A stretch of DNA of 64,000 nucleotides, from contig JAUPSS010000007.1 of assembly GCA_040285825.1 (NCBI GenBank), forward strand, positions 768,501 through 832,500, read 5' to 3'. Made by a program: the position numbers and the translations under genes. Source of the stretch: Eukaryota sp. TZLM1-RC (taxonomy: Eukaryota > Protista > Metamonada: BaSk clade). Position 1 is the first letter of the stretch; every line of letters starts with the position of its first letter. Under the pieces are notes generated by a model. That model searched no databases and was not told the DNA's origin. It saw only the letters and a list, made by a program, of their open reading frames with translations. Positions 14,141-60,231 of this stretch are shown here, one piece after another.

Positions 14141-14834
14141 TCTTTAATAAATGGATTTTTAAAAAGTTTTTTATAAGTTTTGTTATCTGCTATTAATTGA
14201 CTGTGAATCTTTTGTTCCAAGTCAGAGAATTTAAAGTCTACTTATGAGGATGAAGCTCAAACTTCTAGAACATGTTTAGGTATAGATCTTATTGATGCAT
14301 ACAAGATTCCTTCAAAGAATAAAGGATATTTAGTCTATAATTCTGTAGATGGAATTAATGTAAAATAAAATTTGATTTCACAAAAGTTGCTCAGGGGTAA
14401 CTCTGTTAGATATGAAGGCATATATTGTTATACATGAGGCAGCTCATTGTAGTGTTTCTTCAAAACATTCAATATCTCTATATTCCATTTGATGCAAGAT
14501 TCATGTAAGAACTAAGGGTATCCATTTTCAAGGCATCCACATTGATTCCTGTTGTTTTCTATTAACTCTACCCTAGTCACATAAATGATGACTTTCAGGG
14601 TAATTTTTGATTCCTATTATGTTGTCTCCATAGGTGATAGACCAACCCTTTAGCAGAACCCAAAATTTAAGAACATAAACTGGAGTGATCCTGTTTGGAG
14701 CTGATTTTGGACAGTCCTGGGTTTGGATGGGGTTTTTGGTAGAACATCAATATATTCCCAAATTTTTAAGGCGACGCCCCCTCAACATCATGTAAATTAT
14801 TAATTCTTGGACGGTTTGATTAGAGGGAATCTAT

Positions 14835-15344
14835 ATATTTATTGAATTTGCACACTTAATTAAATTAACTCATGACTAATGGGACGACTATCATTGAACC
14901 AAGATTTCCTCTACAAAATCTTAATCTGCTTGCTGTCTAGCTCAAGCTTCTCTTATTCGATTGAAAAACCGCGGTAATCTAATAATAATGGCAAATTGAA
15001 TCCGTGAACGCCATAAAAAAATATCAAATCTTTTCATTGTTTTTTCTTGCACCATTTTTTGGAAGTCATTCAAAAAGTTTCTGCTTCAACTAATAATCTT
15101 CCATTTATCGAAAATGGGAAAGCAATAAAAACCAGCTGTGTGTTTCTATCGACATTAGCCTCTTCAATATCTTTATCATATTTTCTATGTTTTTCTTTTG
15201 CTTTAAAATCACAGGATTAAGTTTTCTTCTTTGAAACAAAGTATCATTTGCAACATTACATGAGACAAAGTCAACAATAGCTTCAGAATTATCATTCCAA
15301 TCATAGTATACATCACCTCTATCATCAGAACCAAAATTATTCAG
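14835..15344 (-). mobile_element. 5'-truncated CRE-like element, family B
   Basis: Near-identical to 35325-35844; DRGDVY...VDFV RLE motif; ends just after AATAAA. Confidence 0.85.
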
Positions 15345-18398: not shown

Positions 18399-19237
18399 AT
18401 TTGAAAGAATCTTGAGAAAGATTTTCTGAACCTTCATGAACCTTAGCTTTCTGTAGGTATACTGGTCTATCTTCATCATCTACATGTGCTTTCATCACGG
18501 CACAACATAGTTACGGTTTGTGTTGTTGATCATTTGTTGAAAAAAATGAAAAAAAAACTTTTGTATAATATTGCTCTGTAAAGCAATTACAAGCACAAAA
18601 GTTTTTTTCTGTCTGTAACAGAAAGGCACTAGATGTTAGTATTTAACCAGCCACAATTAACTAAAAATCTTGTAAATTCAAATAAATTTAAAGAATGGTT
18701 AAAACAACTAAATATTTCGGGTGCAGTAGTTTGGGTCTTATACAAGTGTAGCTCAGAAATAAAATGATGACGTCATCAGATCAAAATGCCACATCTCCAC
18801 TAGATCAAAAAGCACGTGCATTGCCCCTGAGATTAGTTGTCATGTCTGCAACTATTTGGGGATACTCGGAAAATTTGATTGTTGGTTTTGAGAGAACATT
18901 TGCTTGTAGCGAAGTCAACTTGGTTAGGTGAATATAGGTTTTTCTATTTGGATGAATTCATTGAGAAATAGGTTACAGCAAGGAAAAAATATTCCTAGAA
19001 TTATGGTCAGTGCTGCAACAGTTGATGAATCTTTATTGCGCAAGAGTACCAGATGTTGAAACGATTGGCCATTCAGCACAATAGATATGCTTGAGAAGTG
19101 TAATAAAAAAGTATATTAATAGTGGAAATAGAATGTTTCTATTGGGGACTCTACATAGTATAACATCAAAGATCAAATACAATGTGTAGTATATATGAAA
19201 CTCCAACACTAAGAAAACAAAGAACAAAGAACAAAGA

Positions 19238-19364
19238 AAACAAGAACCTCATTCTGTGAATTTCATCGGAAATGCATACATCAAGTAGCATTCCTCCATT
19301 CCCTTATACGGTTTCCTTTTCAGGATCACAGCGCCCGAAGGCAATACATGGATACAAACAACTA
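19238..19364 (-). ncRNA. Candidate omegaRNA (scaffold plus 3' guide) of Fanzor copy 1
   Basis: Immediately 3' of the stop codon: GCC-UUCG-GGC hairpin (19333-19342), UCCU-GAAA-AGGA hairpin (19314-19325), long hairpin 19268-19294, closing helix CUGUGA/UCACAG. The 5' and 3' motifs are shared with copy 2. Exact ends are inferred. Confidence 0.7.
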
Positions 19365-21356
19365 TCACTCTCTCACCTCCCTTCTAAATGTCTCTGGTCT
19401 GATCCCAGTAAAATGTTCAGAAATCGCAATCTCTAGCTGATTTCTTGAAGCGGAAATGTCTCTAGACCAGCGTTCATCACATCTAGGACATTCAAAGTAA
19501 GCATTATTGATTCTTCGAGTGTCTTCATGATACACCTTCCTGTGATGTACCTTGCAACAATTGGTTTTGGCAGATGTCATGTATTCATCTCCAACCTTCA
19601 CATTGGCAAAGTATTTCTTTACTTCTGTCAGAAACTTCTTAGTTGGGGCTTTGGTGGATTGTCGAGAAGGTCCATTACCACCATTACCAAACCAAATAAT
19701 AGTTTCCCTGTTATTAGCTAGTCTCTTAATTTTGTTAATGAAATGAATGAACCTTTTTTGTCTTCTTATCACAAAATCAAACTTATTTCGTCTCAAAATT
19801 CTCTCTGTACTATTGGTCAAAGTTTGGGAAACCAAAGAAATTGTTTCCTGCTCATCATTCCTTATCAGTGAAGCTATTTCAATGAGATACCTGTTGAAGC
19901 TCTCAACGGAATAAGTGTTCACAGAGGATTGAGTGAGTGGCTGGGGAAAATCAATTACTTTTGCTTTCGGATTCAGTAGAATTCCAGATTGTTCAACAAT
20001 TACCCTATTCTCTTGTGAACAATGTCCAGTTGTCCAACCACATAAATTTGAATGGTTTGGATCAACCGCCACGAAAAAAAGGTCTTCTCTGATGGGAAGA
20101 TCCTGCGAGCAATCTTGAGACCGTCTCGCAATTTTCCTCGGTCGGTTAGCTCGCCCATTTATTCTCTTATTTCGTTTTCTAGTGGACTCTCTGAAATAAG
20201 GACGACTTTGACCCAATGCTTGAATTTCAGAATTTTTTCGCCTGGTGCACGTCTTTTTGGGTTTCTTTGAAAAAGTGAAGCGCAATGAGAGTCCATTGCT
20301 AGAAATTGAGAAAGTTTTAAATTTTTTCTTGTTAAAAAACTTAAAAGGGTTCCGTAATAATTGTTGGTTAGGATTCAACTTTTTGAAATATTCCAGAGCT
20401 TGTTGATTAAAAGGAACAAACCCTGGAACTTTGGTGGCAATTGGGGATAAGGCATGTCTTCGAAATACATTTGGGCATGTACTTTCTAGACGATGTAAAA
20501 TTGCCAATCCCCAATGGCTTATCAACCAACAATTATAAACAGTGACATCCAATTCATCACGCCTCAGGGCACGCGTATACAAATCATTAGATGTTACTGT
20601 TTGGTTCCAAATTTCGGAAATATGAAAATGATATTCATCATACCATTGTCTTAAATTTGCAGAAATTGTGGAACTGGAAACCACACAACTGGCATACTTT
20701 GATGGAGCAGGACACTCCATCTGCTTACCCATAGACCTGAAGAAATTCAGTTTCCAGGTCACAGGGCCATCGGTCAGCAGCTGTCTGTGAGCTGATTCGA
20801 GTTGAACAGCTCTATTGCTAAAAAGAGCAGCCTGACAAAAGGGTGGATGTTCTTGGCCCTCTACTAACGGAGGCCACGGCCAGGTAGCACTTGATGTCAT
20901 ATGCGTAAGAGCCTCATAGACATCAGGGTTAGTGCTCTTGAAAGGCTCCCTAATTTTAGGTCGACTGTGGGTGACGCAGTCGAAGCACTGCGACCAGAAT
21001 TGACGGTGAGCGAGCCAGCAGGACAGATGCGGATATTCTAATAGAAGCTTTCTTGCCAATAAGGTGGCATAGAAAGCAACATCTCGTAAGTGAATAAGCT
21101 GTGCCTCAATAGCTTGAGCAGCACGAGAGGCAAAGAATCTTGGGAGGCTTACAGGCACAGTCGTGGTTGTGGCAGACGGGAGAGGGTCTGGTGGCGGGCG
21201 AACTGCAAATGGGAGTGGCCTTTCGCCCTCATTTAAGCCAGCACTTGGGTGGTGCGCTGCTTCTGGAATCCAACCATTATCATCTGGTGATGACACTTGT
21301 CTCTGAGGACAAGTACGTCGGTTGTGGGTGGCCGCCCGGCAGACGGAACACGGCAT
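19365..21356 (-). CDS. Fanzor1-type (TnpB-derived) RNA-guided endonuclease, intact
   Basis: RuvC-I VAVDPN (codon 20061-20063), IIWFGNG region without the canonical Glu, rearranged GDEYMTS (19584-19586), NCC...CPRC zinc finger, RuvC-III WSRDISASRN (19458-19460); first ATG at 21356. Confidence 0.88.
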   Translation of the reverse strand: MPCSVCRAATHNRRTCPQRQVSSPDDNGWIPEAAHHPSAGLNEGERPLPFAVRPPPDPLPSATTTTVPVSLPRFFASRAAQAIEAQLIHLRDVAFYATLLARKLLLEYPHLSCWLAHRQFWSQCFDCVTHSRPKIREPFKSTNPDVYEALTHMTSSATWPWPPLVEGQEHPPFCQAALFSNRAVQLESAHRQLLTDGPVTWKLNFFRSMGKQMECPAPSKYASCVVSSSTISANLRQWYDEYHFHISEIWNQTVTSNDLYTRALRRDELDVTVYNCWLISHWGLAILHRLESTCPNVFRRHALSPIATKVPGFVPFNQQALEYFKKLNPNQQLLRNPFKFFNKKKFKTFSISSNGLSLRFTFSKKPKKTCTRRKNSEIQALGQSRPYFRESTRKRNKRINGRANRPRKIARRSQDCSQDLPIREDLFFVAVDPNHSNLCGWTTGHCSQENRVIVEQSGILLNPKAKVIDFPQPLTQSSVNTYSVESFNRYLIEIASLIRNDEQETISLVSQTLTNSTERILRRNKFDFVIRRQKRFIHFINKIKRLANNRETIIWFGNGGNGPSRQSTKAPTKKFLTEVKKYFANVKVGDEYMTSAKTNCCKVHHRKVYHEDTRRINNAYFECPRCDERWSRDISASRNQLEIAISEHFTGIRPETFRREVRE

Positions 21357-21831
21357 AGTGTCAGACAATCAGAAATGATTGATTGTTGAGTTTGGGTTAT
21401 TTTCAAAATTTGCTGTCGATGTCAACAACTTTTCTTCTATTTGCTATATTGAAATAAAGATTGTTTAAACAGTTTATTAAAGGTACATCTATCGAGACAT
21501 CAGGTTTCTGTTGTGTTTCTCTCTTGAAAGCAGCATGTTGTGTCACTGATGTTGGTAATTGGGTTTCGAATGGTTTGCCGTCGGTTTCATCATCCAAAAT
21601 TCATCTTTATCAAACTTTTTCTTTGTTTTTCATCTCAACATTCAAAGGTCCGTACTTCAGCAATATCTTGACCTCTCCAACCTTCCTAATAGGCTTTCAG
21701 TAGTAGCACAAACTACACATCTCCACACCTTTCAATGAGTACCTATAAAGATACTACAGAATATTGGTTTTTTCGTCGACGTTTGAAACTAGAATTGCTT
21801 AAACAACGCTATAGTCCTGAATCTGTAGCAA

Positions 21832-22620
21832 ATGCTTACACCAAGTGTATCAACAAGACACCAGAGGGGCTATCACTCATCAACAAAATCTAAAATCTCC
21901 ACTCCAATCGAAACCCATCCAGTCATTCTTTCCGCACGTCGTCGTTGGGAACGCCATGTCGTCGCAGCCCTGGAAGATCTTCGCCGTGAAAGCAAACTCC
22001 CGCTTGTAGATTCTGTCACATCCTCGTCCGTTGACTTTATGTCCCTTCGTTACGTGTGGGAGCCGGAGGAACTGTTCTCCGTTCTTCAGTCTCTCTTCTC
22101 CTAACCGTAACAATGAACCTTCCCTATCACCATGGGGCCTTATCAAGCTCTCCATGCACGTTCGTAGCTTAACCAATCTAGCTAATGAATTCACAGAGCT
22201 TTCGCCAAACAAGTATGTTCAGATAGGAGTTGACGAATTAACATTTAATAATTCAAATAATAATTCTGTTAATTCACGTATTAAATTAGCTGCTGACGTC
22301 GCAGGGAAGCACTACCCTCCCCAGTGTCGTCATTTTTGCCGGCAAGGTGTTCCTAGCGTTAACTAGGTACAAATGTTAACTACATAACCATTGATCAGTT
22401 TTTTCTACTTTGGGACAGGATTATTGGTTTTGATGATTTAATTTTATTACCTTTACTAGCTGCTGCCAAATTTTTCAATTGTATTGTTTTTAAGGGAATG
22501 GTAAAACTAATTTCTGTTTCACTCCTAAACCAATTTTGAAATTCTTCAGTACAATTTTCACCCAAATTCAAACATATATCATGCTGCTCTTGTATTAGGC
22601 TCTGTCTATATTAGCTTTGT
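21832..22620 (+). pseudogene. TBC1D19-like RabGAP pseudogene (frameshift plus internal deletion)
   Basis: WGLIKL...FTELSP...QIGVDE...FCRQGVPS, then almost directly DQFFLLWDRIIGFDDLILLPLLAAA (C-terminal TBC1D19 motif). Frameshift near 22100. End approximate. Confidence 0.6.
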
Positions 22621-23255
22621 TGCAGTACATTCTGGCAATTTCAAATAAACAATATTGAATCCATAGATGTCTCTATGCCATCAACACACAAGGAAAATGT
22701 TAACTACTTATCACCACTTTATTTTATTTATAAAAAAGATACCTCTGGTGTCCGAATGATTGACACTTCCTTCAGTTGTATTAGTCCGCAATTTTCCGTG
22801 TTTTCTTCAACAGAAAAACCGTCAATAAAACCGTTTGAAAGTGATAAACTGAAGGATACTCTGGAGGAGGAAATATCAGATAATTTATACATCAATGAGG
22901 TTGTGTCCGTCATATAGAGGATTGACTTGTACGATAGAATCGTGCCACATTAGCTTGGGTAGTACTAATGGAGGATAGAGCATCTAGAGCACGCACCTTT
23001 GTATCTTCGGAAGCTGGAACCTTAAGTTGAAGTAAATTGACATCAGAAAAAAAATGATCGGTGTTAAACGGCATGGATTTTGAGAATTGGGAATGGGGTG
23101 GGAATGGGAATGGGAATGGGAATGGCAATTCACCAATTTTGCAAAATACATTCAATATTATATAACAGAATGGGTTGATGACTCACTGTGACGTCATCGA
23201 AATATCCATTTCATTTCATTTCCCTCTTTGTACATTAGCCATATCACTATTTCCC

Positions 23256-25629: not shown

Positions 25630-26760
25630 TTCTATTTTGTGTCAATCAGCTTTTTTTTGGTGGATGCAAGAATTTTACTTATTAATTTTCTCGTAGATTT
25701 CCTGAAGATTCTCATTTGTTAGTTCCCAGTTGCAGTCCATCTTTGAATGAGTTATCTTGTGAACTCGATAGATTGTCACCACAAATCTAGACCAAATGTT
25801 TTCCCCAATCAATTCAAGAAATTAATCACTTAACTTTTATTAAATTTACACACCTTACAAAATAAAATCATAACTAATGGAACGAAATTCATTGAACCAA
25901 AATTTCCTTTATAAAATCTTGATCTGCTTGCTGTCTAGCTAAGGCTTCTCTAATTCGATTGAAAAACCGAGGCAATCTATTAATAATGGCAAATTGAATT
26001 CGAGAGCGCCACAAAAGGATATCAAATCTTTTCATTGTTTTTACTTGAATCATTTTTTGGAAATCATTCAAAAAAGTTTTTTGCTTCTACTGATAGTCTT
26101 CTGTTTATCGAAAATGGGGAAGCAATAAAAACAAGTGGTCTATTTCTATCAGCATTAGCTTCGATTCAAGAAATTCCAAACCGATCTCTTTTTGATTTGC
26201 AGTTTTGTTGTAAAAGCTTCAACAAAAATTGTCAAAGATTTTTGAAAGCTTGGATTTTGATGTTAGACTTAACTCGGCCAAGAAAATAATCCCGCTTTTG
26301 CAAATCTTTTCAAGATATGTGTGATAGTACTTCTTCTGCTTAAGTAACAACCATTCCTCAAGTTTATGATACTGTCTTAACTGATTCTGCTTGGACTCTG
26401 AATATGAGACTTCGTTCCTTTATCTGGCCTGTTAATTTACCTCATAATTTAATTTATACATGTTCTCGAAAAATTACAATTACTCATTTGTTAAATTGTA
26501 AACATTTTATTACTTTTAGAAGCAAGGTTCACGATGCTGTCAGAGACCAATTAGATTGTATGTGTAAGTCTCATAAAATTGAATCTTTTTTGAAACCTCT
26601 GTTGTCAAATATGTTTGATGCTGAAGATGATTTTCATAAGAATAATGGAGGTGATGCCATATTACCTGGATCAGATGGAACCTTCATTTTATTGGATGTA
26701 ATGCCTGTTGATCCTTGTAATGTCTCAAATGAAATGCTTGTTAATTCTGAAATTCAAAAT
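25630..26760 (+). mobile_element. CRE-like family-A fragment interrupted by a family-B insertion
   Basis: Colinear with 61790-62565; the family-A sequence resumes after the nested insert. Confidence 0.85.
25824..26163 (-). mobile_element. Family-B CRE-like 3' fragment nested in family A
   Basis: KRFDILLWRSRIQFAIINRLP frame; 12-bp TSD ATTCAAGAAATT (25812-25823, 26164-26175). Confidence 0.85.
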
Positions 26761-28496: not shown

Positions 28497-28621
28497 GGTA
28501 CAAAATTGGTGACAGAGAATTTCACACAAAGTGAATATTGAATAAATATCCCGAATAATTGTGTAAACTTCTCAAGGGTTAGTATACACTAAACACCTTG
28601 GAAATACGTTGATTAAAACAG
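28497..28621 (-). ncRNA. Candidate omegaRNA of Fanzor copy 2
   Basis: Same 5' motif and TGAAATTC 3' motif as copy 1 at nearly the same spacing (105 vs 104 nt after TAG); hairpin 28573-28600; 15-bp terminal stem 28515-28529/28559-28573. Confidence 0.65.
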
Positions 28622-30489
28622 CTACTGCAGTCTTCTTAGACGTCTCACACGCCTTGGCCTTCGGAATGGTTCTGGCCTAGTAGCAGTGAAATACTCACTA
28701 ATTGCAATCTCCAGCTGGTTTCTGGAGGCTGAGATGTCTCTAGACCAGTTGGTCTGACATCGAGGGCAATCGAACTTTGCGTTATTTACCCTTCCGTCAT
28801 CATGATAGATCTTTCTATGAAAGACCTTACAGCAATTCACTTTTGCTGAGGTCATAAACTCGTCCCCGACTTTGACGCTTTCAAAGTGTTTTTTGATTTG
28901 TTTGAGAAATTTCTTTCGGGGGGATTTCACAGATTGACGAGATGGACCACCACCGCCATTGCCGAACCAAACTATAGTGTTTCTTCCTTCAGACAAGCGT
29001 TTAATTTTGTTAATAAAACTAGTTAGTCTCTTTTATCTTCGTATGAAGAAATCAAACTTATTTCTTCTCAGCTTTTTTCTTGCAACACGCTGCAAATTTC
29101 CAGACATAATTGAAGCATATTCAGGCTCTTCCTCAGATTCAGGAACATAAGGTAAACTTATTTCAATCAGATACTCTTGGAAGCTCTGAGCGGAATAAGT
29201 GTTAGGAGTTGCTTGAGTGAGAGGAGGGGGGTGATTTAGTCTTCGTTCTTTTGGATTCAGTAGCAGTCCAGAACGTTCAAAAACAGTAGCAGAATTTCGG
29301 AAAGAACCAGCAGTCCAACCACAAAGATTGTTGTGGTTTGGATCAATGGCTACAAAAAACAAATTTTCATCAGGATCTCTGTAATTGGGCTGTTGTTCCA
29401 CTGGTAACCGCGGTCTTCTCTGTGGATTTGCTGTTCTAAGGACATTGGGTTTTCGCTTCCTTTCAGAGTTATGAAAATCATAATTTCCAGAGGCTCGCCT
29501 GGGCTCAAATTCCGCTTTATTTGGCCTATTATAAGTTTTTCTTTCCTTCTGGGTAAACGTAAACCGCAAGGAATCACCATTCGAAAAAATGGTATAGTTA
29601 ATAAATTTCGATTTATTAAAAAACCGATAAGGGTTGTTCAGAAGCTCTTTGTTTGCATTTAGTTTTGTGAAATAAGCTTCTGCTTCTTTAGTCAAGCTGC
29701 AGAAGCATGGAGAGCTAACTGGACAGTGGAGAGAGAGTGCCTTTTCATCACATCAGGGCAGTTATCTTCTAAAAAAGATAAATTGTTCAAGCCAGATTGA
29801 ACGATTGTTGCAGCAGACTCCATATTGATGGGAAACCGTTCGTTTCTTATTGAATTTTCGAACAAATTTTGACCGCCACCAATATAGGCGTTGGCTGTCA
29901 TATTGAGCCAATGGACCAAGATATGCTGGTGTATTTCTTGATACCATTGTAAAATTGACTCATCTGGCTGAATCCCTTGAAGTACACAGTCGGCGTATTT
30001 CTTGGGCCAGGGGCAATTTAGAAACTGAGCACAGCTTTTGAAAAAATTGCGTTTCCAGACGACAGGGCCGTCAGCAAGCAACTGACAAAAAGCTTCTCGC
30101 AGTTGGATGGGTCGACTGCCAAGAAGAGTGGAAAGACACCAAAATCTACCACCGTCGGCTGAGGTGGTTTCATTCAGCGGTCGCCAGGGCCAAAAGTGCT
30201 GAACAAGGTGTTGTAGCGCTTGGTAAACCAAAGGATGGTTTTCAAATGGCCTCCTTTGTTTAGGCTCACTTTGGCAAACAAAGTCGAAACAGAGGCTCCA
30301 GAACTGGCTTTGAGTAAGCCACATAGAGTGTTCTGGGTATTGGAGCACAAAGAGTCGTGCTAGGTGAGTAGCATGAGCTCCAATACTAGCAAGAACTTGG
30401 AACTGGCGTTCCATTGCTTCTTGTGCCTCTGAGTCGAAGAACTGGTTGACAGACGCTCCCACAGTTGTAGTTAGTAGAACGTTATCCAT
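28622..30489 (-). pseudogene. Second Fanzor1-type nuclease, disrupted
   Basis: Three ORFs colinear with copy 1; VAIDPN, GDEFMTS and WSRDISASRN retained; frameshift near 29700-29735 and in-frame TAA at 29033-29035 where copy 1 has Gln. Confidence 0.88.
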
Positions 30490-30951
30490 GGCAGTCAACA
30501 CAGAACGGAAACAGTCAGAAATGATTGAAAATTTGTTTCCTAAAATTGAAAATTTGTTGAAGTCAATCAATCTTATAGTTGTCAATTCAAAGTAAAGTTA
30601 GTTACAAGTGTTTATTAATGAGACATATCGTTCAAGATTACTTTCTGAATATTTTCCTTTCTTCAGACAAGAACTACATGTTACAAAAGTTGGTGAGTGA
30701 AGTTTGGTTGGGTTGTCATCATTCCCCAGATTCGTAATTGAATTTCATTTCATCACTTACAACATTTCATCATTTACTCTACTACGAACCTTCTCCTACG
30801 AATTCTTGCTTGCAGCTACTACCACTCTTTATGTCGGAAATTGAGAATCACTTTTATTTTAAGTAAAGTTTTTTTTCTTCCTTCCTCTATGGAATAGAAC
30901 CATGAATACAAGATTGATTCTGGAATCAAATCAAATATAAAAGTCTCTACT

Positions 30952-35318: not shown

Positions 35319-35910
35319 TAATTGTATTTATTGAATTTGCACACTTAATTAAATTAACTCAATGCTAATGGGACGACTATCATTGAACCATGATTTCCTC
35401 TACACAATCTTGATCTGCTTGCTGTCTAGCTAAAGCTTCTCTTATTCGATTGAAAAACCGAGGTAATCTATTAATAATGGCAAATTGAATCCGTGAACGC
35501 CATAAAAATATATCAAATCTTTTCATTGTTTTTTCTTGCACCATTTTTTGGAAGTCATTCAAAAAAGTTTCTGCTTCAACTGATAATCTTCCATTTAACG
35601 AAAATGGGAAAGCAATAAAAACCAGTTGTGTATTTCTATCGACATTAGCCTCTTCAATATCTTTATCATATTTTCTATGTTTCTTTTTTGCTTTAAAATC
35701 CAGAGCAGCCACAGGATTAAGTTTTCTTCTGTGAACCAAAGTATCATTTGCAACATTACATGAGACAAAGTCAACAATAGCTTCAGAATTATCAATCCAA
35801 TCACAGTATACATCACCTCTATCATCAGAACCAAAATTATTCAGAGAAAGTGTTCCTTCAGCAGGGGCTCTTTGATACACGATATCCTTGCAGTTTGTGC
35901 CATATTGAAA
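35319..35910 (-). mobile_element. 5'-truncated CRE-like element, family B, with intact RLE frame
   Basis: DRGDVYCDW...VDFVSC...KAKKKHRKY...FPFSLNGRL; TSD ACTAGATACACT (35307-35318, 35911-35922). Confidence 0.88.
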
Positions 35911-36892
35911 ACTAGATACACTCAATGCATTGGTGGATTTAATAAAATGTAATTGTGAAATATTAAGTTAATGACAATAAGTCGGTCCTATCATTTGTAC
36001 TGACTGCCTTTGAAGTTGTATAACATTTGTTAATAACCATCAGTGTTTTTCAGCTTGTGTACATTCTCACGTTTCAATTTACTTACTCATTTGTCAAATT
36101 TTTGAAAACCACCAAACCTCTGCTGATGCTGAAAAACTCCATCAATGAATGTTTGAGTATTTCACTAAGCGTTAAAAAGCCGCACTGTTGGGTCATTAAA
36201 GGCATGCATCGGAAACATAACCTAGAAAACGGACAAACGGGTAATTTATGACAGTATTGGAAACAATCGAGAAATTGTTCAAGAATCCAATTATAGAAAT
36301 GATGACGTGGCATTACGTGATAACTGTAAAATACTAAAATAACTAAACTACTGTGGCTAGGAGCCAACGTAAGTGTACATTATAGTGATTGTTGACTTTT
36401 TGGTAATATAATCTTCAATAAATTCCTATGTTCAATGTTCTCTGTTTCTGAATTTGAATAAAAAATGTTGGTAAATTATCCAAATTTTTCAAAGCCCTTT
36501 TCCAAAAAATGTTATAACTTTTACAATAACTGGTAATGTTCCCAACACTTGCCTCTTGTATGACAGATTTGACCATTTTTAGTGTTACAGTTAACCTCTC
36601 CACTATTTTAATCACTTGGGATTCAGTGGTAGGAAAATGAAATTTGGTAGATGTATACCATCTGGCAGTGGTAAAAGAACTAATAAAAATGAAGCTTTCT
36701 GTCCGATCTCCTATATATCCTACTGATTTCTTGTAATTATTTATGGTTCAAACCAACTTCTAATTCAAAAAAAGTACAATTAATAAAAGGAAACTGTATT
36801 ATTACTAAAATAAGACTAAAATAACTAATAGCAAAGAACCACTAATTTCCAGTGTTCGGGGGTGCGGGTTGCGTGAACACCGGCGAACACCA

Positions 36893-49857: not shown

Positions 49858-50460
49858 CAAGGTTCATGATGCTGTCAAAATCCTATTATCTTGTATGTGC
49901 AAATCTCATAGAATTGAATCTTGATTGGAACCTCAGTTGTCAAATCGTTTTGATGCTGAAGATGATTTCCATAAGAATAACAGAGGTGATGTCATATTAC
50001 CTATATTTGAAAAAACCTTCATTTTAGTAAATGTAATGTTTGTTGATCCTTTTGATGTCTCATATGAAAGGCTTGCTAATTCTGAAATTCATAGTCCTCT
50101 TTCAAATGCTGAAAATTTCAAAATCAAAAAAATATATCGATCATTGTTCAAAATATCCACCAAACAGCATGCAGCTCACTATGAGAGAATTGCATCTAGT
50201 GTTTTTGTCTTCGGAGAGATGGATTTTTTAGATGTTGATTTTTAGGTTTTTAATAAAATTAAAATTAAAAAAAATCAGCATGCAAAATACAATTTGTATC
50301 CATTTGTATTTTCTCTTTTTGGTTCACTTGCTCCCACGGCTTTACGTTCTTCGGCAGATTTTGGAATAATTGTAAAGAGAAGAACCAACAGAAATTTCAA
50401 CAGATTTTTTTGGCAAGATGGAATTGTGTTTTCTATTATCAAGGGCTTTCACTTGGATGT
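49858..50460 (+). mobile_element. Rearranged CRE-like family-A 3' fragments
   Basis: Homologous to 62333-62945, with LEP and NNRGD motifs; abuts the LTR. Confidence 0.8.
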
Positions 50461-59397: not shown

Positions 59398-59755
59398 GTT
59401 TATTGAATTTGCACACCTAATTAAATTAACTCATAACTAATGGGACGACTATCATTGAACCAAGATTTCCTGTACAAAATCATGATCTGCTTGCTGTCTA
59501 GCTAAAGCTTCTCTTATTCGATTGAAAAACCGAGGTAATCTATTAATAATGGCAAATTGAATTCGTGAATGCCATAAAAAATATCAAATCTTTTCATTGT
59601 TTTTCCTCGCACCATTTTTTGGAAGTCATTCAAAAAAGTTTCTGCTTCATCTGATAATCTTCCATTTATCGAAAATGGGAATTCAATAAAAACCAGCTGT
59701 GTATTTCTATCAGCATTAGCCTCTTCAATATCTTTATCATATTTTCTATGTTTTG
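59398..59755 (-). mobile_element. 5'-truncated CRE-like element, family B
   Basis: Near-identical to 35325-35682. Confidence 0.85.
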
Positions 59756-60231
59756 CAGCCAATAATCAACTGAATCTGGGGATATTCAAATATAATTTCA
59801 TTTTTGTTACAACTGCTTCCTTAGTGGCACACAATCCAAATCTTCGTGGAACCATGGTTACAAAAAGTGAAGAATCTCATGACTGAATTTCACAAACACC
59901 CTTTTTCAATAACAATGAGTGAAGATCTTTATTTAAAACAGCCGAGCTGCATATATTAATATAAAGATCATTTTCAAAAGTAATCAATTACTTTTTCGTT
60001 CACTGTTTTGTGGCACAAAAGCAGCCACTCTTTTACTGTCTTGCATACAAGTAAGCCTAATTGTACCATGTCCATGTACCATTCATTCCATGGTGATCCA
60101 TGGTATAAGTCGAAAAGTATTCATTCTGAAAGTCCACCACAAGTAGTAGCTTTTTGAATTACAAAAGCTTCGATGAAACCATATCGATGAACCATCAATA
60201 AACCATCACTTTACCAACAACAGATTGGAAT

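What the first reader, a model, noticed from the sequence alone, without database searches (positions are those of the whole stretch)
19254..19364. omegaRNA scaffold revealed by comparing the two copies: conserved ends and length, different stems
Seen on the minus strand: copy 1 TAG-TTGTTTGTATCCATGTATTGCC versus copy 2 TAG-CTGTTTTAATCAACGTATTTCC (16/22 identical). Both reach TGAAATTC 104 and 105 nt after the TAG. The middles differ but both fold. Copy 1 has a UUCG tetraloop, a GAAA tetraloop, a long hairpin and a CUGUGA/UCACAG closing helix. Copy 2 has an extended first hairpin and a 15-bp terminal stem. Inference: selection acts on RNA architecture; the guides start near 19253 (AATGAGGTTC...) and 28514 (TGTCACCAAT...).
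Basis: partly seen in the sequence, partly recalled or inferred. Interest (0 to 1): 0.85.

Follow-up and report, generated by a model that had tools for sequence, protein, structure and literature searches.

The report
Guide-RNA tail of a protist Fanzor
The 111 bases after an intact Fanzor gene (a eukaryotic RNA-guided DNA cutter) in the flagellate Skoliomonas litria form the conserved, folded end of a multicopy mobile element and look like its guide-RNA scaffold, though no transcript could be checked.

Summary
The window is Skoliomonas litria (Metamonada). ORF 19365-21368(-) is an intact Fanzor1: catalytic D436, E595 and D637, a zinc finger, and best fold matches to solved Fanzor1 structures.

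The 111-nt tail belongs to a roughly 3.9-kb element. Eight further copies, all 98-99% identical, end at exactly the same base (...TGAAATTCACAG | 19253).

Three diverged Fanzor families in two sister species (29-43% protein identity) carry ATGCAT-N-GAAA-N-CACAG 73-134 nt after their stop codons. Unconstrained folds give the same module in all four:
- a closing helix, (C/U)UGUG with CACAG;
- a hairpin whose 3' strand is AUGCAU plus pyrimidines, with compensatory changes;
- an unpaired UGAAA.

Pairing is specific to the sense strand and rich in G.U. Copy 2 is a pseudogene whose tail is homologous to copy 1's.

Most likely this is a Fanzor1 omegaRNA scaffold (about 0.7). The main rival is a DNA-level transposon end signal. 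No RNA run was listed, so expression is untested.

Five copies have 4-15-bp target duplications that start right after ATTG. This suggests ATTG as the target motif and TAM.

I rate it a new member of a known kind. Earlier notes of this scan describe Fanzor copies with similar tails elsewhere in this genome.

The parts
19365..21356 (-). Intact Fanzor1 gene, 663 aa from the ATG at 21356 (the mechanical ORF starts at TTG 21368). It has the RuvC-I DPNH motif (D436), the alternative RuvC-II Glu in GDEYMTS (E595), RuvC-III RD (D637) and a CC...CxxC zinc finger.
   Evidence: identical to the annotated protein P0019. Invariant columns. Profile match to SpuFz1 8gkh, E 2.4e-68. Foldseek top hits are PpFz, SpuFz and GtFz at E about 1e-13. 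Weak Pfam PF07282 match.
19254..19364 (-). Candidate omegaRNA scaffold: the 3' non-coding tail of the element, running from the second in-frame stop (TAG) to the right end.
   Evidence: Conserved at 98-100% in eight other copies. The only two variants lie in the apical loop of hairpin P2. The architecture is shared with orthologous tails.
19333..19342 (-). P0 hairpin GCC-UUCG-GGC. It is preceded by the conserved leader ...AUGUAUU (19343-19349).
   Evidence: MFE folds. A hairpin at the same position with different sequence (GGCC/GGCC, GGACC/GGUC, CAAGG/CCUUG) occurs in L010, L012 and copy 2. It is absent in L011.
19326..19331 (-). P1 5' strand, CUGUGA.
   Evidence: It pairs with UCACAG (19254-19259) in the unconstrained MFE. 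The same (C/U)UGUG-CACAG helix appears in L010, L011 and L012.
19269..19294 (-). P2 hairpin, GGAAUGCUAC / loop UUGAU / GUAuGCAUUUCC. Its 3' strand carries the conserved AUGCAU.
   Evidence: The partners of G, C, A, U of AUGCAU and of the next four bases stay paired in all four lineages, with U-A/C-G/U.G exchanges. Upstream-shuffle controls give P1 and P2 together in only 0.4-1.5% of cases per lineage.
19260..19267 (-). Joining strand GAUGAAAU, holding the conserved unpaired (U/G)GAAA.
   Evidence: The GAAA block is invariant in the alignment of the four lineages.
19254..19259 (-). P1 3' strand UCACAG, the last bases of the element (right end).
   Evidence: All nine copies end here and diverge at the next base.
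19234..19253 (-). Predicted guide, the first 20 nt of flank (starts AAUGAGGUUC).
   Evidence: It lies immediately 3' of the right end, and every copy has a different flank. The 20-nt length is assumed from known Fanzor/TnpB guides.
23149..23156 (-). Insertion site at the left side: ATTG (23153-23156), then AATG (23149-23152), which repeats the first four bases after the right end. The element body starts at or below 23148.
   Evidence: The same ATTG + duplication layout is seen in L001 (7 bp), L005 (11), L007 (9) and L008 (15, one mismatch).
28622..30585 (-). Copy 2: a Fanzor1 pseudogene of a diverged subfamily (67-72% DNA identity to copy 1), with at least one frameshift and one premature stop.
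28513..28624 (-). Tail of copy 2, homologous to the copy-1 tail. It has a P0-like hairpin, a 7-bp P2-like hairpin and an extended terminal helix that pairs GUGUGAAAUUCUC.
   Evidence: The end at 28513 is inferred from 11/13 identity with GTGAAATTCACAG and is not verified by other copies.

Best explanation
The stretch is the non-coding 3' tail of a young, multicopy Fanzor1 element of Skoliomonas litria. It most likely serves as the scaffold of that Fanzor's omegaRNA.

Proposed working:
- A sense-strand transcript runs through the tail and across the right end at 19254.
- It folds into leader, P0 hairpin and a closing helix P1 (CUGUGA/UCACAG). P1 encloses a small hairpin and the P2 hairpin, which carries AUGCAU. 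An unpaired UGAAA follows.
- The roughly 20 nt of flank that follow (from 19253) act as the guide.
- The Fanzor would then recognise the uninterrupted target, in which that sequence follows ATTG. I propose ATTG as the TAM.

Shown here: the protein's identity, the exact right end, copy-specific flanks, and conserved pairing across four to five lineages on the sense strand.

Inferred: transcription and processing, binding to the protein, guide length, the TAM role of ATTG, and cleavage.
For: - The protein is Fanzor1. D436, E595, D637 and the zinc-finger cysteines are invariant among 25 relatives. The family profile matches SpuFz1, PpFz1 and GtFz1 at E 2e-68 to 1e-52. The AF2 model (pLDDT 78) has the Fanzor1 structures as its best matches.
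- Nine copies end at the same base and differ from the next base on.
- The pattern ATGCAT-N(3-10)-GAAA-N(0-4)-CACAG is expected 0.03 times per 64 kb. It occurs once in each of three orthologous loci, on the gene's strand, 73-134 nt after the stop. Otherwise it occurs only at Fanzor ends.
- Unconstrained MFE folds of c1, L010, L011 and L012 give the same P1/P2 module, with compensatory changes at four P2 pairs.
- P1 and P2 arise together in 4, 15, 8 and 8 of 1000 controls with the upstream part shuffled.
- z-scores of the whole tails: L010 -2.9, L012 -3.8, L011 -1.8.
- Sense folds are far more stable than antisense folds, with 8/28 and 5/20 G.U pairs in L010 and L011. With DNA parameters the shared module is lost in L010 and L011 drops to z -0.3.
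- Among eight copies, the only two tail variants sit in the P2 loop.
- Tail lengths (72-135 nt) fit known Fanzor1 omegaRNAs of 75-150 nt, which have a conserved first stem-loop and a variable middle (PMC11423790). Their position between ORF end and right end fits as well (PMC10530073).
Against: - There is no RNA evidence: no RNA run was listed.
- The full 111-nt tail of copy 1 folds no better than shuffles (z -1.18).
- Covariation rests on only four to five lineages and on my anchoring of independent MFE folds. RNAalifold on the MAFFT alignment recovers only the invariant P1.
- A covariance model built from the copy-1 family alone does not pick out the orthologous tails.
- P0 is only 3-4 bp in copy 1 and absent in L011, whereas solved Fanzor1 omegaRNAs have a 7-bp SL1.
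- The right ends of the orthologous families are inferred from the motif and from adjacent host genes, not from multiple copies.
Confidence: 0.7

Rival explanations
1. The conserved terminal module is mainly a DNA-level cis signal of the mobile element, with no guide-RNA role. It would be a subterminal hairpin and end sequence read as single-stranded DNA by a trans-acting HUH/rolling-circle-type or other transposition enzyme.
For: - All copies keep the 3' end while their 5' ends vary.
- Duplications of 4-15 bp follow a fixed tetranucleotide. This matches the one-ended Helitron2-type Fanzor1 elements CRe-1/2/3 of Chlamydomonas, whose 3' hairpin is a transposition signal (PMC3627910).
- ATGCAT and TGAAATTCA are palindromes in copy 1.
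- A 250-370-nt relic of another lineage keeps the same last 13 nt.
Against: - The pairing is rich in G.U and one-stranded. DNA-parameter folds lose the shared architecture in L010, and L011 falls to background.
- TGAAATTCA is not palindromic in the orthologues (TGAAATCCA, TGAAAAACA).
- No transposase lies in or beside the element: the 178-aa upstream ORF has no Pfam match.
- The 5'/3' asymmetric inverted repeat expected for Helitron2 is not significant (66/1000 shuffles).
- The two roles are not exclusive. In IS200/IS605 the right-end hairpin is part of the omegaRNA.
Confidence: 0.17
2. The tail is an ordinary 3' UTR of the Fanzor mRNA. Its conserved motifs are mRNA 3'-end processing or stability signals, and the element end merely coincides with the transcript end.
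For: It directly follows the stop codon on the sense strand. The short conserved A/U-rich motif UGAAA near the end could be a processing signal. No data on Skoliomonas polyadenylation signals were found.
Against: - The conserved helix reaches the very last base of the element, with compensatory changes.
- An extremely truncated relic without an intact gene keeps the same end.
- Known Fanzor RNAs map to exactly this place.
Confidence: 0.08
3. This is chance resemblance: two decaying paralogous tails that share ends by common descent only, with no function.
For: Copies 1 and 2 alone give only 16/22 and 10/14 identities and one shared 8-mer. The whole-tail fold of copy 1 is not significant.
Against: The motif and the fold recur in three families at 29-43% protein identity in other species. 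The boundary is exact in nine copies.
Confidence: 0.02

Closest known systems
Fanzor1 nucleases with their omegaRNAs (SpuFz1, PpFz1, GtFz1; PDB 8gkh, 9cf0, 9cer)
   Same: The domain order and fold match. So do the RuvC D / alternative E / D triad with an inert residue at the canonical RuvC-II site, and the zinc finger. A non-coding RNA region lies on the sense strand between the ORF end and the transposon right end, with the guide taken from the flank. Scaffold length is 75-150 nt, with conserved terminal parts and a variable middle. The element is multicopy.
   Different: Protein identity to the solved Fanzors is only 10-14%. The host is a metamonad; no paper in the searched library holds both 'Fanzor' and 'metamonad'. 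The family has its own 3' module (AUGCAU hairpin, UGAAA, CACAG closing helix). The first hairpin is short or absent rather than a 7-bp SL1. The copy-1 family has an N-terminal CCHC knuckle. RNA and activity are untested.
Chlamydomonas CRe-1/2/3, Fanzor1-carrying non-autonomous Helitron2 elements (Bao and Jurka 2013, PMC3627910)
   Same: Fanzor1 elements without a transposase of their own. Their 3' ends are intact and their 5' ends variably truncated. Variable-length target-site duplications begin right after a fixed tetranucleotide. A 3' subterminal hairpin is present.
   Different: The target motif here is ATTG, not TTTT, and duplications are 4-15 bp rather than 7-19 bp. The asymmetric terminal inverted repeat is not significant here. 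No RepHel partner with shared termini was identified.
Bacterial IS200/IS605 TnpB with its omegaRNA (e.g. ISDra2)
   Same: An RNA-guided RuvC nuclease. Its guide RNA scaffold is the element's right end and its guide is the adjacent flank. The target motif of insertion equals the TAM.
   Different: No TnpA gene is present. Target-site duplications are present here (IS200/IS605 make none). The RuvC-II glutamate is relocated, and the protein is much larger with a long helical REC region.

Membership tests
Fanzor1 (eukaryotic TnpB-like RNA-guided nuclease) | RuvC-I Asp, alternative RuvC-II Glu just before the TS motif, and RuvC-III Asp in RD | tested here: met
   D436 (DPNH), E595 (GDEYMTS) and D637 (RDIS) are invariant in 25 aligned relatives.
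Fanzor1 (eukaryotic TnpB-like RNA-guided nuclease) | Canonical RuvC-II Glu replaced by an inert residue, with the alternative Glu some tens of residues downstream (PMC10530073) | tested here: met
   WFGNGG, with invariant G561, sits at the strand end. E595 lies 34 residues later.
Fanzor1 (eukaryotic TnpB-like RNA-guided nuclease) | C4 zinc finger between the TS motif and RD | tested here: met
   C605, C627 and C630 are invariant. Pfam PF07282 matches at E 3.8e-4, below the gathering score.
Fanzor1 (eukaryotic TnpB-like RNA-guided nuclease) | Whole-protein fold like solved Fanzor1 | tested here: met
   Foldseek top seven hits are PpFz, SpuFz and GtFz at E 5e-14 to 3e-10, ahead of Cas12 and TnpB. 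The TM-scores are only 0.36-0.44. The profile matches 8gkh at E 2.4e-68 over nearly full length.
Fanzor1 (eukaryotic TnpB-like RNA-guided nuclease) | RNA-guided DNA cleavage | not testable with these tools
   This needs biochemistry.
Fanzor/TnpB omegaRNA | Lies on the sense strand between the ORF 3' end and the element's right end, with the guide taken from the copy-specific flank | tested here: met
   Nine copies share the tail to the base and diverge after CACAG.
Fanzor/TnpB omegaRNA | Secondary structure conserved across diverged relatives | tested here: met
   P1 and P2 appear in four independent MFE folds with compensatory changes. Shuffle controls reach this in 0.4-1.5% of cases per lineage. 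Only four to five lineages were available. RNAalifold on the MAFFT alignment finds P1 only.
Fanzor/TnpB omegaRNA | First stem-loop of about 7 bp, as in solved Fanzor1 complexes (PMC11423790) | tested here: inconclusive
   P0 is 3-4 bp in copy 1 and 4-10 bp in L010, L012 and copy 2. None is seen in L011. The RNA may start inside the ORF.
Fanzor/TnpB omegaRNA | A discrete transcript that binds the nuclease | not testable with these tools
   No RNA run was listed for this sequence.
Fanzor/TnpB omegaRNA | A TAM 5' of the guide-matching target in the uninterrupted site | tested here: inconclusive
   ATTG precedes the duplicated target in five of five copies that have a duplication. Its role as a TAM is an inference.
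Helitron2-type non-autonomous Fanzor1 element | 3' ends intact, 5' ends truncated, and variable duplications after a fixed tetranucleotide | tested here: met
Helitron2-type non-autonomous Fanzor1 element | Asymmetric terminal inverted repeats (5' terminal against 3' subterminal) | tested here: not met
   The best local match, GGGAATG..GGAATG, is reached by 66 of 1000 shuffles.
Helitron2-type non-autonomous Fanzor1 element | An autonomous RepHel partner with the same termini | not tested
   Only unverified notes of HUH Rep genes elsewhere in this genome exist.
IS200/IS605 | A TnpA (Y1 HUH) gene beside tnpB, and no target-site duplication | tested here: not met
   The only other ORF of the element (178 aa) has no Pfam match. 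Duplications are present.

The most novel reading that the evidence does not exclude
The Skoliomonas Fanzor1 elements may be transposase-free units that spread by a copy mechanism anchored at the 3' end. In this reading the same conserved module (AUGCAU hairpin, UGAAA, CACAG) is both the guide-RNA scaffold and the start point of copying. New copies are laid down right after ATTG with 4-15-bp duplications and frequent 5' truncation, often just upstream of host start codons. ATTG would then be both the insertion motif and the TAM, which would tie the RNA-guided nuclease directly to the spread of a eukaryotic element.
Probability: 0.12. Interest if true: 0.85.

Novelty: new member of a known kind. 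Interest (0 to 1): 0.5.

Why it matters
- It extends Fanzor1 with a recognisable omegaRNA-type tail to Metamonada. The main Fanzor surveys I searched do not mention this supergroup.
- It gives a concrete, testable RNA model: boundaries to the base, helices P0/P1/P2, the guide start, and a predicted ATTG TAM. The nuclease is intact and recently multiplied.
- The exact ends, the duplications after ATTG and the 5' truncations give a handle on how Fanzor elements without a transposase move. That question is still open.
- As biology it is an expected kind of thing, not a new principle.

Tried and rejected
- Rfam scan of the window: no family reached its gathering score.
- RNA evidence: the look-up of sequencing runs listed no RNA run.
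- A metagenome scan for relatives found none.
- A covariance model built from the copy-1 family alone (R1) scores the true orthologous tails at noise level (L011 10.5 bits, E 2.9; L010 and L012 not found), with default filters and with filters off. It did align a third-lineage relic through CUGUGA/UCACAG at E 0.28.
- MAFFT alignments of the four modules put the P2 5' strands out of register. For that reason count of structure pairs was not used. Pairs were instead tabulated from independent MFE folds anchored on the invariant 3' strand.
- The Helitron2-type asymmetric inverted repeat between the 5' (CATTCC)n and the 3' subterminal region is not significant.
- TGAAATTCATAA/G matches at 50083, 56893 and 62559 lie inside another repeat family and are not element ends.
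- No other copy of the copy-2 subfamily was in reach, so its end is unverified.
- ATTG + duplication was not found for L002, L003, L004, L009 or the three orthologous loci.

Full report
**Where the window comes from.** The 667-codon ORF at 19365-21368(-) is 94-98% identical to a cluster of 17 proteins annotated in 'Eukaryota sp. TZLM1-RC'. This is Skoliomonas litria, a free-living haloalkaliphilic metamonad (PMC11603281; bioRxiv 10.1101/2023.05.03.539051). Locus L006 (GCA_040285825.1, contig JAUPSS010000007.1) matches the window at 100% over 7 kb.

**The observation.**
- After TAG, the two 22-mers agree at 16 positions.
- TGAAATTC ends 104 nt (copy 1) and 105 nt (copy 2) after TAG.
- The two tails align better than all 1000 shuffles, with the best identity at both ends. 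They are therefore homologous along their whole length.
- In that alignment the central hairpins correspond. GGAAUGC/GCAUUUCC in copy 1 matches GGAUAUU/AAUAUUC in copy 2, with changes on both strands. The 'different stems' are largely the same stems after compensatory change.

There are three corrections.
- The true stop of copy 1 is TGA (19365-19367), and the TAG is a second in-frame stop.
- The whole 111-nt tail of copy 1 does not beat shuffles (z -1.18). Copy 2 is marginal (z -2.19).

Copy 2 is a pseudogene with a frameshift and a premature stop. It is only 67-72% identical in DNA to copy 1.

**The protein.**
- Pfam gives only a sub-threshold Cas12f1-like TNB match.
- A profile of the Skoliomonas family finds 731 proteins at E <= 0.001.
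- An alignment with 24 relatives has invariant D436, E595, C605, C627, C630, R636, D637 and N643.
- That profile matches the solved Fanzor1 proteins SpuFz1, PpFz1 and GtFz1 at E 2e-68 to 1e-52, and TnpB and Cas12f weakly.
- The AlphaFold2 model (pLDDT 78) has those Fanzor1 structures as its seven best Foldseek matches, ahead of Cas12g, Cas12f and TnpB.
- The canonical RuvC-II position holds glycine (WFGNGG), and the conserved glutamate lies 34 residues later in GDEYMTS. This is the rearranged site described for Fanzors (PMC10530073).

The gene is an intact Fanzor1.

**The element and its right end.** BLAST of the copy-1 region against eight other loci of the same genome gives 98-99% identity. 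In every case the match stops at window 19252-19254. Reading the junctions shows that all nine copies end with ...GATGAAATTCACAG and differ from the next base on.

Among eight copies the tail carries only two variants, a substitution and a 5-nt duplication. Both lie in the apical loop of the long hairpin.

**Relatives in sister species.** I fetched loci for three diverged families at 29-43% protein identity: L010 from strain GEM-RC1, and L011 and L012 from TZLM3-RCL.
- Each has ATGCAT, 3-10 nt, GAAA, 0-4 nt, CACAG on the gene's strand, ending 73-134 nt after the stop.
- The pattern is expected 0.03 times per 64 kb.
- In about 160 kb of held sequence it occurs only at Fanzor 3' ends.
- In L011 and L012, annotated host genes start 46 and 6 nt after CACAG. 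This bounds those elements at that point.

**Structure.** Unconstrained MFE folds of the four tails give the same module.
- A closing helix P1 pairs (C/U)UGUG with the terminal CACAG.
- A hairpin P2 has AUGCAU plus a pyrimidine run as its 3' strand.
- An unpaired (U/G)GAAA lies between P2 and the 3' strand of P1.
- Upstream of P1, copy 1, copy 2, L010 and L012 have a hairpin P0 at the same place with unrelated stem sequences. It is preceded by a conserved GUAUU-like leader.

Anchoring on the invariant 3' strand shows how the pairs behave.
- G, C, A and U of AUGCAU are paired in all four lineages, with C/U opposite G and A/G opposite U.
- The next four positions switch between U-A, U.G and C-G on both sides.

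I then kept each 3' strand fixed and shuffled the upstream part. P1 and P2 arose together in 4, 15, 8 and 8 of 1000 trials.

The whole tails, with no chosen sub-window, give z -2.9 for L010, -3.8 for L012 and -1.8 for L011. The 78-nt module of copy 1 gives z -3.9, but I chose that sub-window after seeing the fold.

The sense strand folds much better than the antisense strand (for example -25.1 against -12.3 kcal/mol in L010). G.U pairs make up 8 of 28 pairs in L010 and 5 of 20 in L011. With DNA parameters the shared P2 is lost in L010, and L011 drops to z -0.3. This favours RNA over a DNA hairpin, but weakly.

**Comparison with what is known.** Fanzor RNAs map to the non-coding region between the ORF end and the transposon right end, with the guide reading into the flank (PMC10530073). 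Solved Fanzor1 omegaRNAs are 75-150 nt long, with a conserved first stem-loop and a variable region before the guide (PMC11423790). The Skoliomonas tails (72-135 nt) fit this in place, strand, length and pattern of conservation.

No paper in the searched library holds both 'Fanzor' and 'metamonad'. The main-text searches of four Fanzor papers returned none of the metamonad-related terms tried. Earlier notes of this scan on other parts of the same genome also describe Fanzor1 copies with such tails. This is therefore not the scan's first sighting.

**How the element moves (beyond the finding).** Left ends differ between copies while right ends are fixed. Five of nine copies have a duplication of the bases that follow the right end, and each duplication starts immediately after ATTG:

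| Copy | Duplication length |
|---|---|
| window | 4 bp |
| L001 | 7 bp |
| L007 | 9 bp |
| L005 | 11 bp |
| L008 | 15 bp (one mismatch) |

ATTG has a frequency of 0.0077 per position.

In the uninterrupted site, ATTG would sit directly 5' of the sequence that becomes the guide. It is therefore my candidate TAM. This is an inference by analogy with IS200/IS605 and with Fanzors whose TAM equals the insertion motif.

The pattern of fixed 3' end, truncated 5' ends and variable duplications after a fixed tetranucleotide is what Bao and Jurka described for the Fanzor1-carrying Helitron2 elements CRe-1/2/3 of Chlamydomonas (PMC3627910). The asymmetric inverted repeat of Helitron2 is not significant here, and no transposase is in the element.

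**Verdict.** This is most likely the omegaRNA scaffold of an intact Fanzor1 (about 0.7). The main rival is a DNA-level end signal, and the two roles could coexist. Expression, binding and cleavage remain untested. It is a new member of a known kind.

Noticed in passing
window 23149-23156 (-); L001:~575-590, L005:2241-2255, L007:2576-2588, L008:1537-1555: Five of nine copies of the element have a 4-15-bp target-site duplication that begins right after ATTG. Left ends vary while the right end is fixed, a one-ended pattern like the Chlamydomonas CRe-1/2/3 Fanzor1 elements.
   Followed up: yes
L002:5103-5143, L003:5900-5954, L004:5104-5145, L008:5110-5155, L011:4887-4933, L012:4884-4890: In six of twelve loci an annotated host gene on the same strand starts only 6-54 nt after the Fanzor right end. 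The window copy itself is about 1 kb from the next gene.
   Followed up: partly
L003:2232-2592, L005:1510-2237, L001:6641-6892 (-): Relics of a third Fanzor lineage with a weak tblastn match to the Fanzor C-terminus. They also end precisely in GTGAAATTCACAG, preceded by ATGCAT or ATGTAT. An 11-bp terminal hairpin competes with a CUGUGA/UCACAG helix. In L005 the copy-1-type element is inserted 7 nt after this relic's right end.
   Followed up: partly
window 21309-21350 (-): The copy-1 family protein has an N-terminal CCHC zinc knuckle (C-x2-C-x4-H-x4-C) in a disordered, proline-rich leader. The orthologous families and copy 2 lack it.
   Followed up: no
window 21830-22366 (+); L004:1989-2525 (-): The element carries a divergently oriented 178-aa ORF with no Pfam match. 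It is split into two ORFs in the window copy.
   Followed up: partly
L005:5086-5683: The tail of the L005 copy is interrupted by an insertion of about 600 nt just before the terminal GAAATTCACAG. The bases ...CCGATGA(AA) are repeated on both sides of the insertion.
   Followed up: no
L002:938-1209: A further Fanzor relic, 67% identical to copy 2, lies upstream of the L002 copy. It is cut off at its 3' side, so it has no tail.
   Followed up: no
window 14832-15343, 25836-26162, 35319-35912, 59399-59976: An unrelated dispersed repeat family (77-95% identity) recurs in the window and in several loci. It explains the 11-kb-spaced direct repeats near both Fanzor copies.
   Followed up: no
window 23083-23131 (-): The 5' end of the full-length element starts with a run of CATTCC repeats. 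In the window copy, 17 bases not shared with L001 lie between the duplication and this run, which could be filler at the 5' junction.
   Followed up: partly
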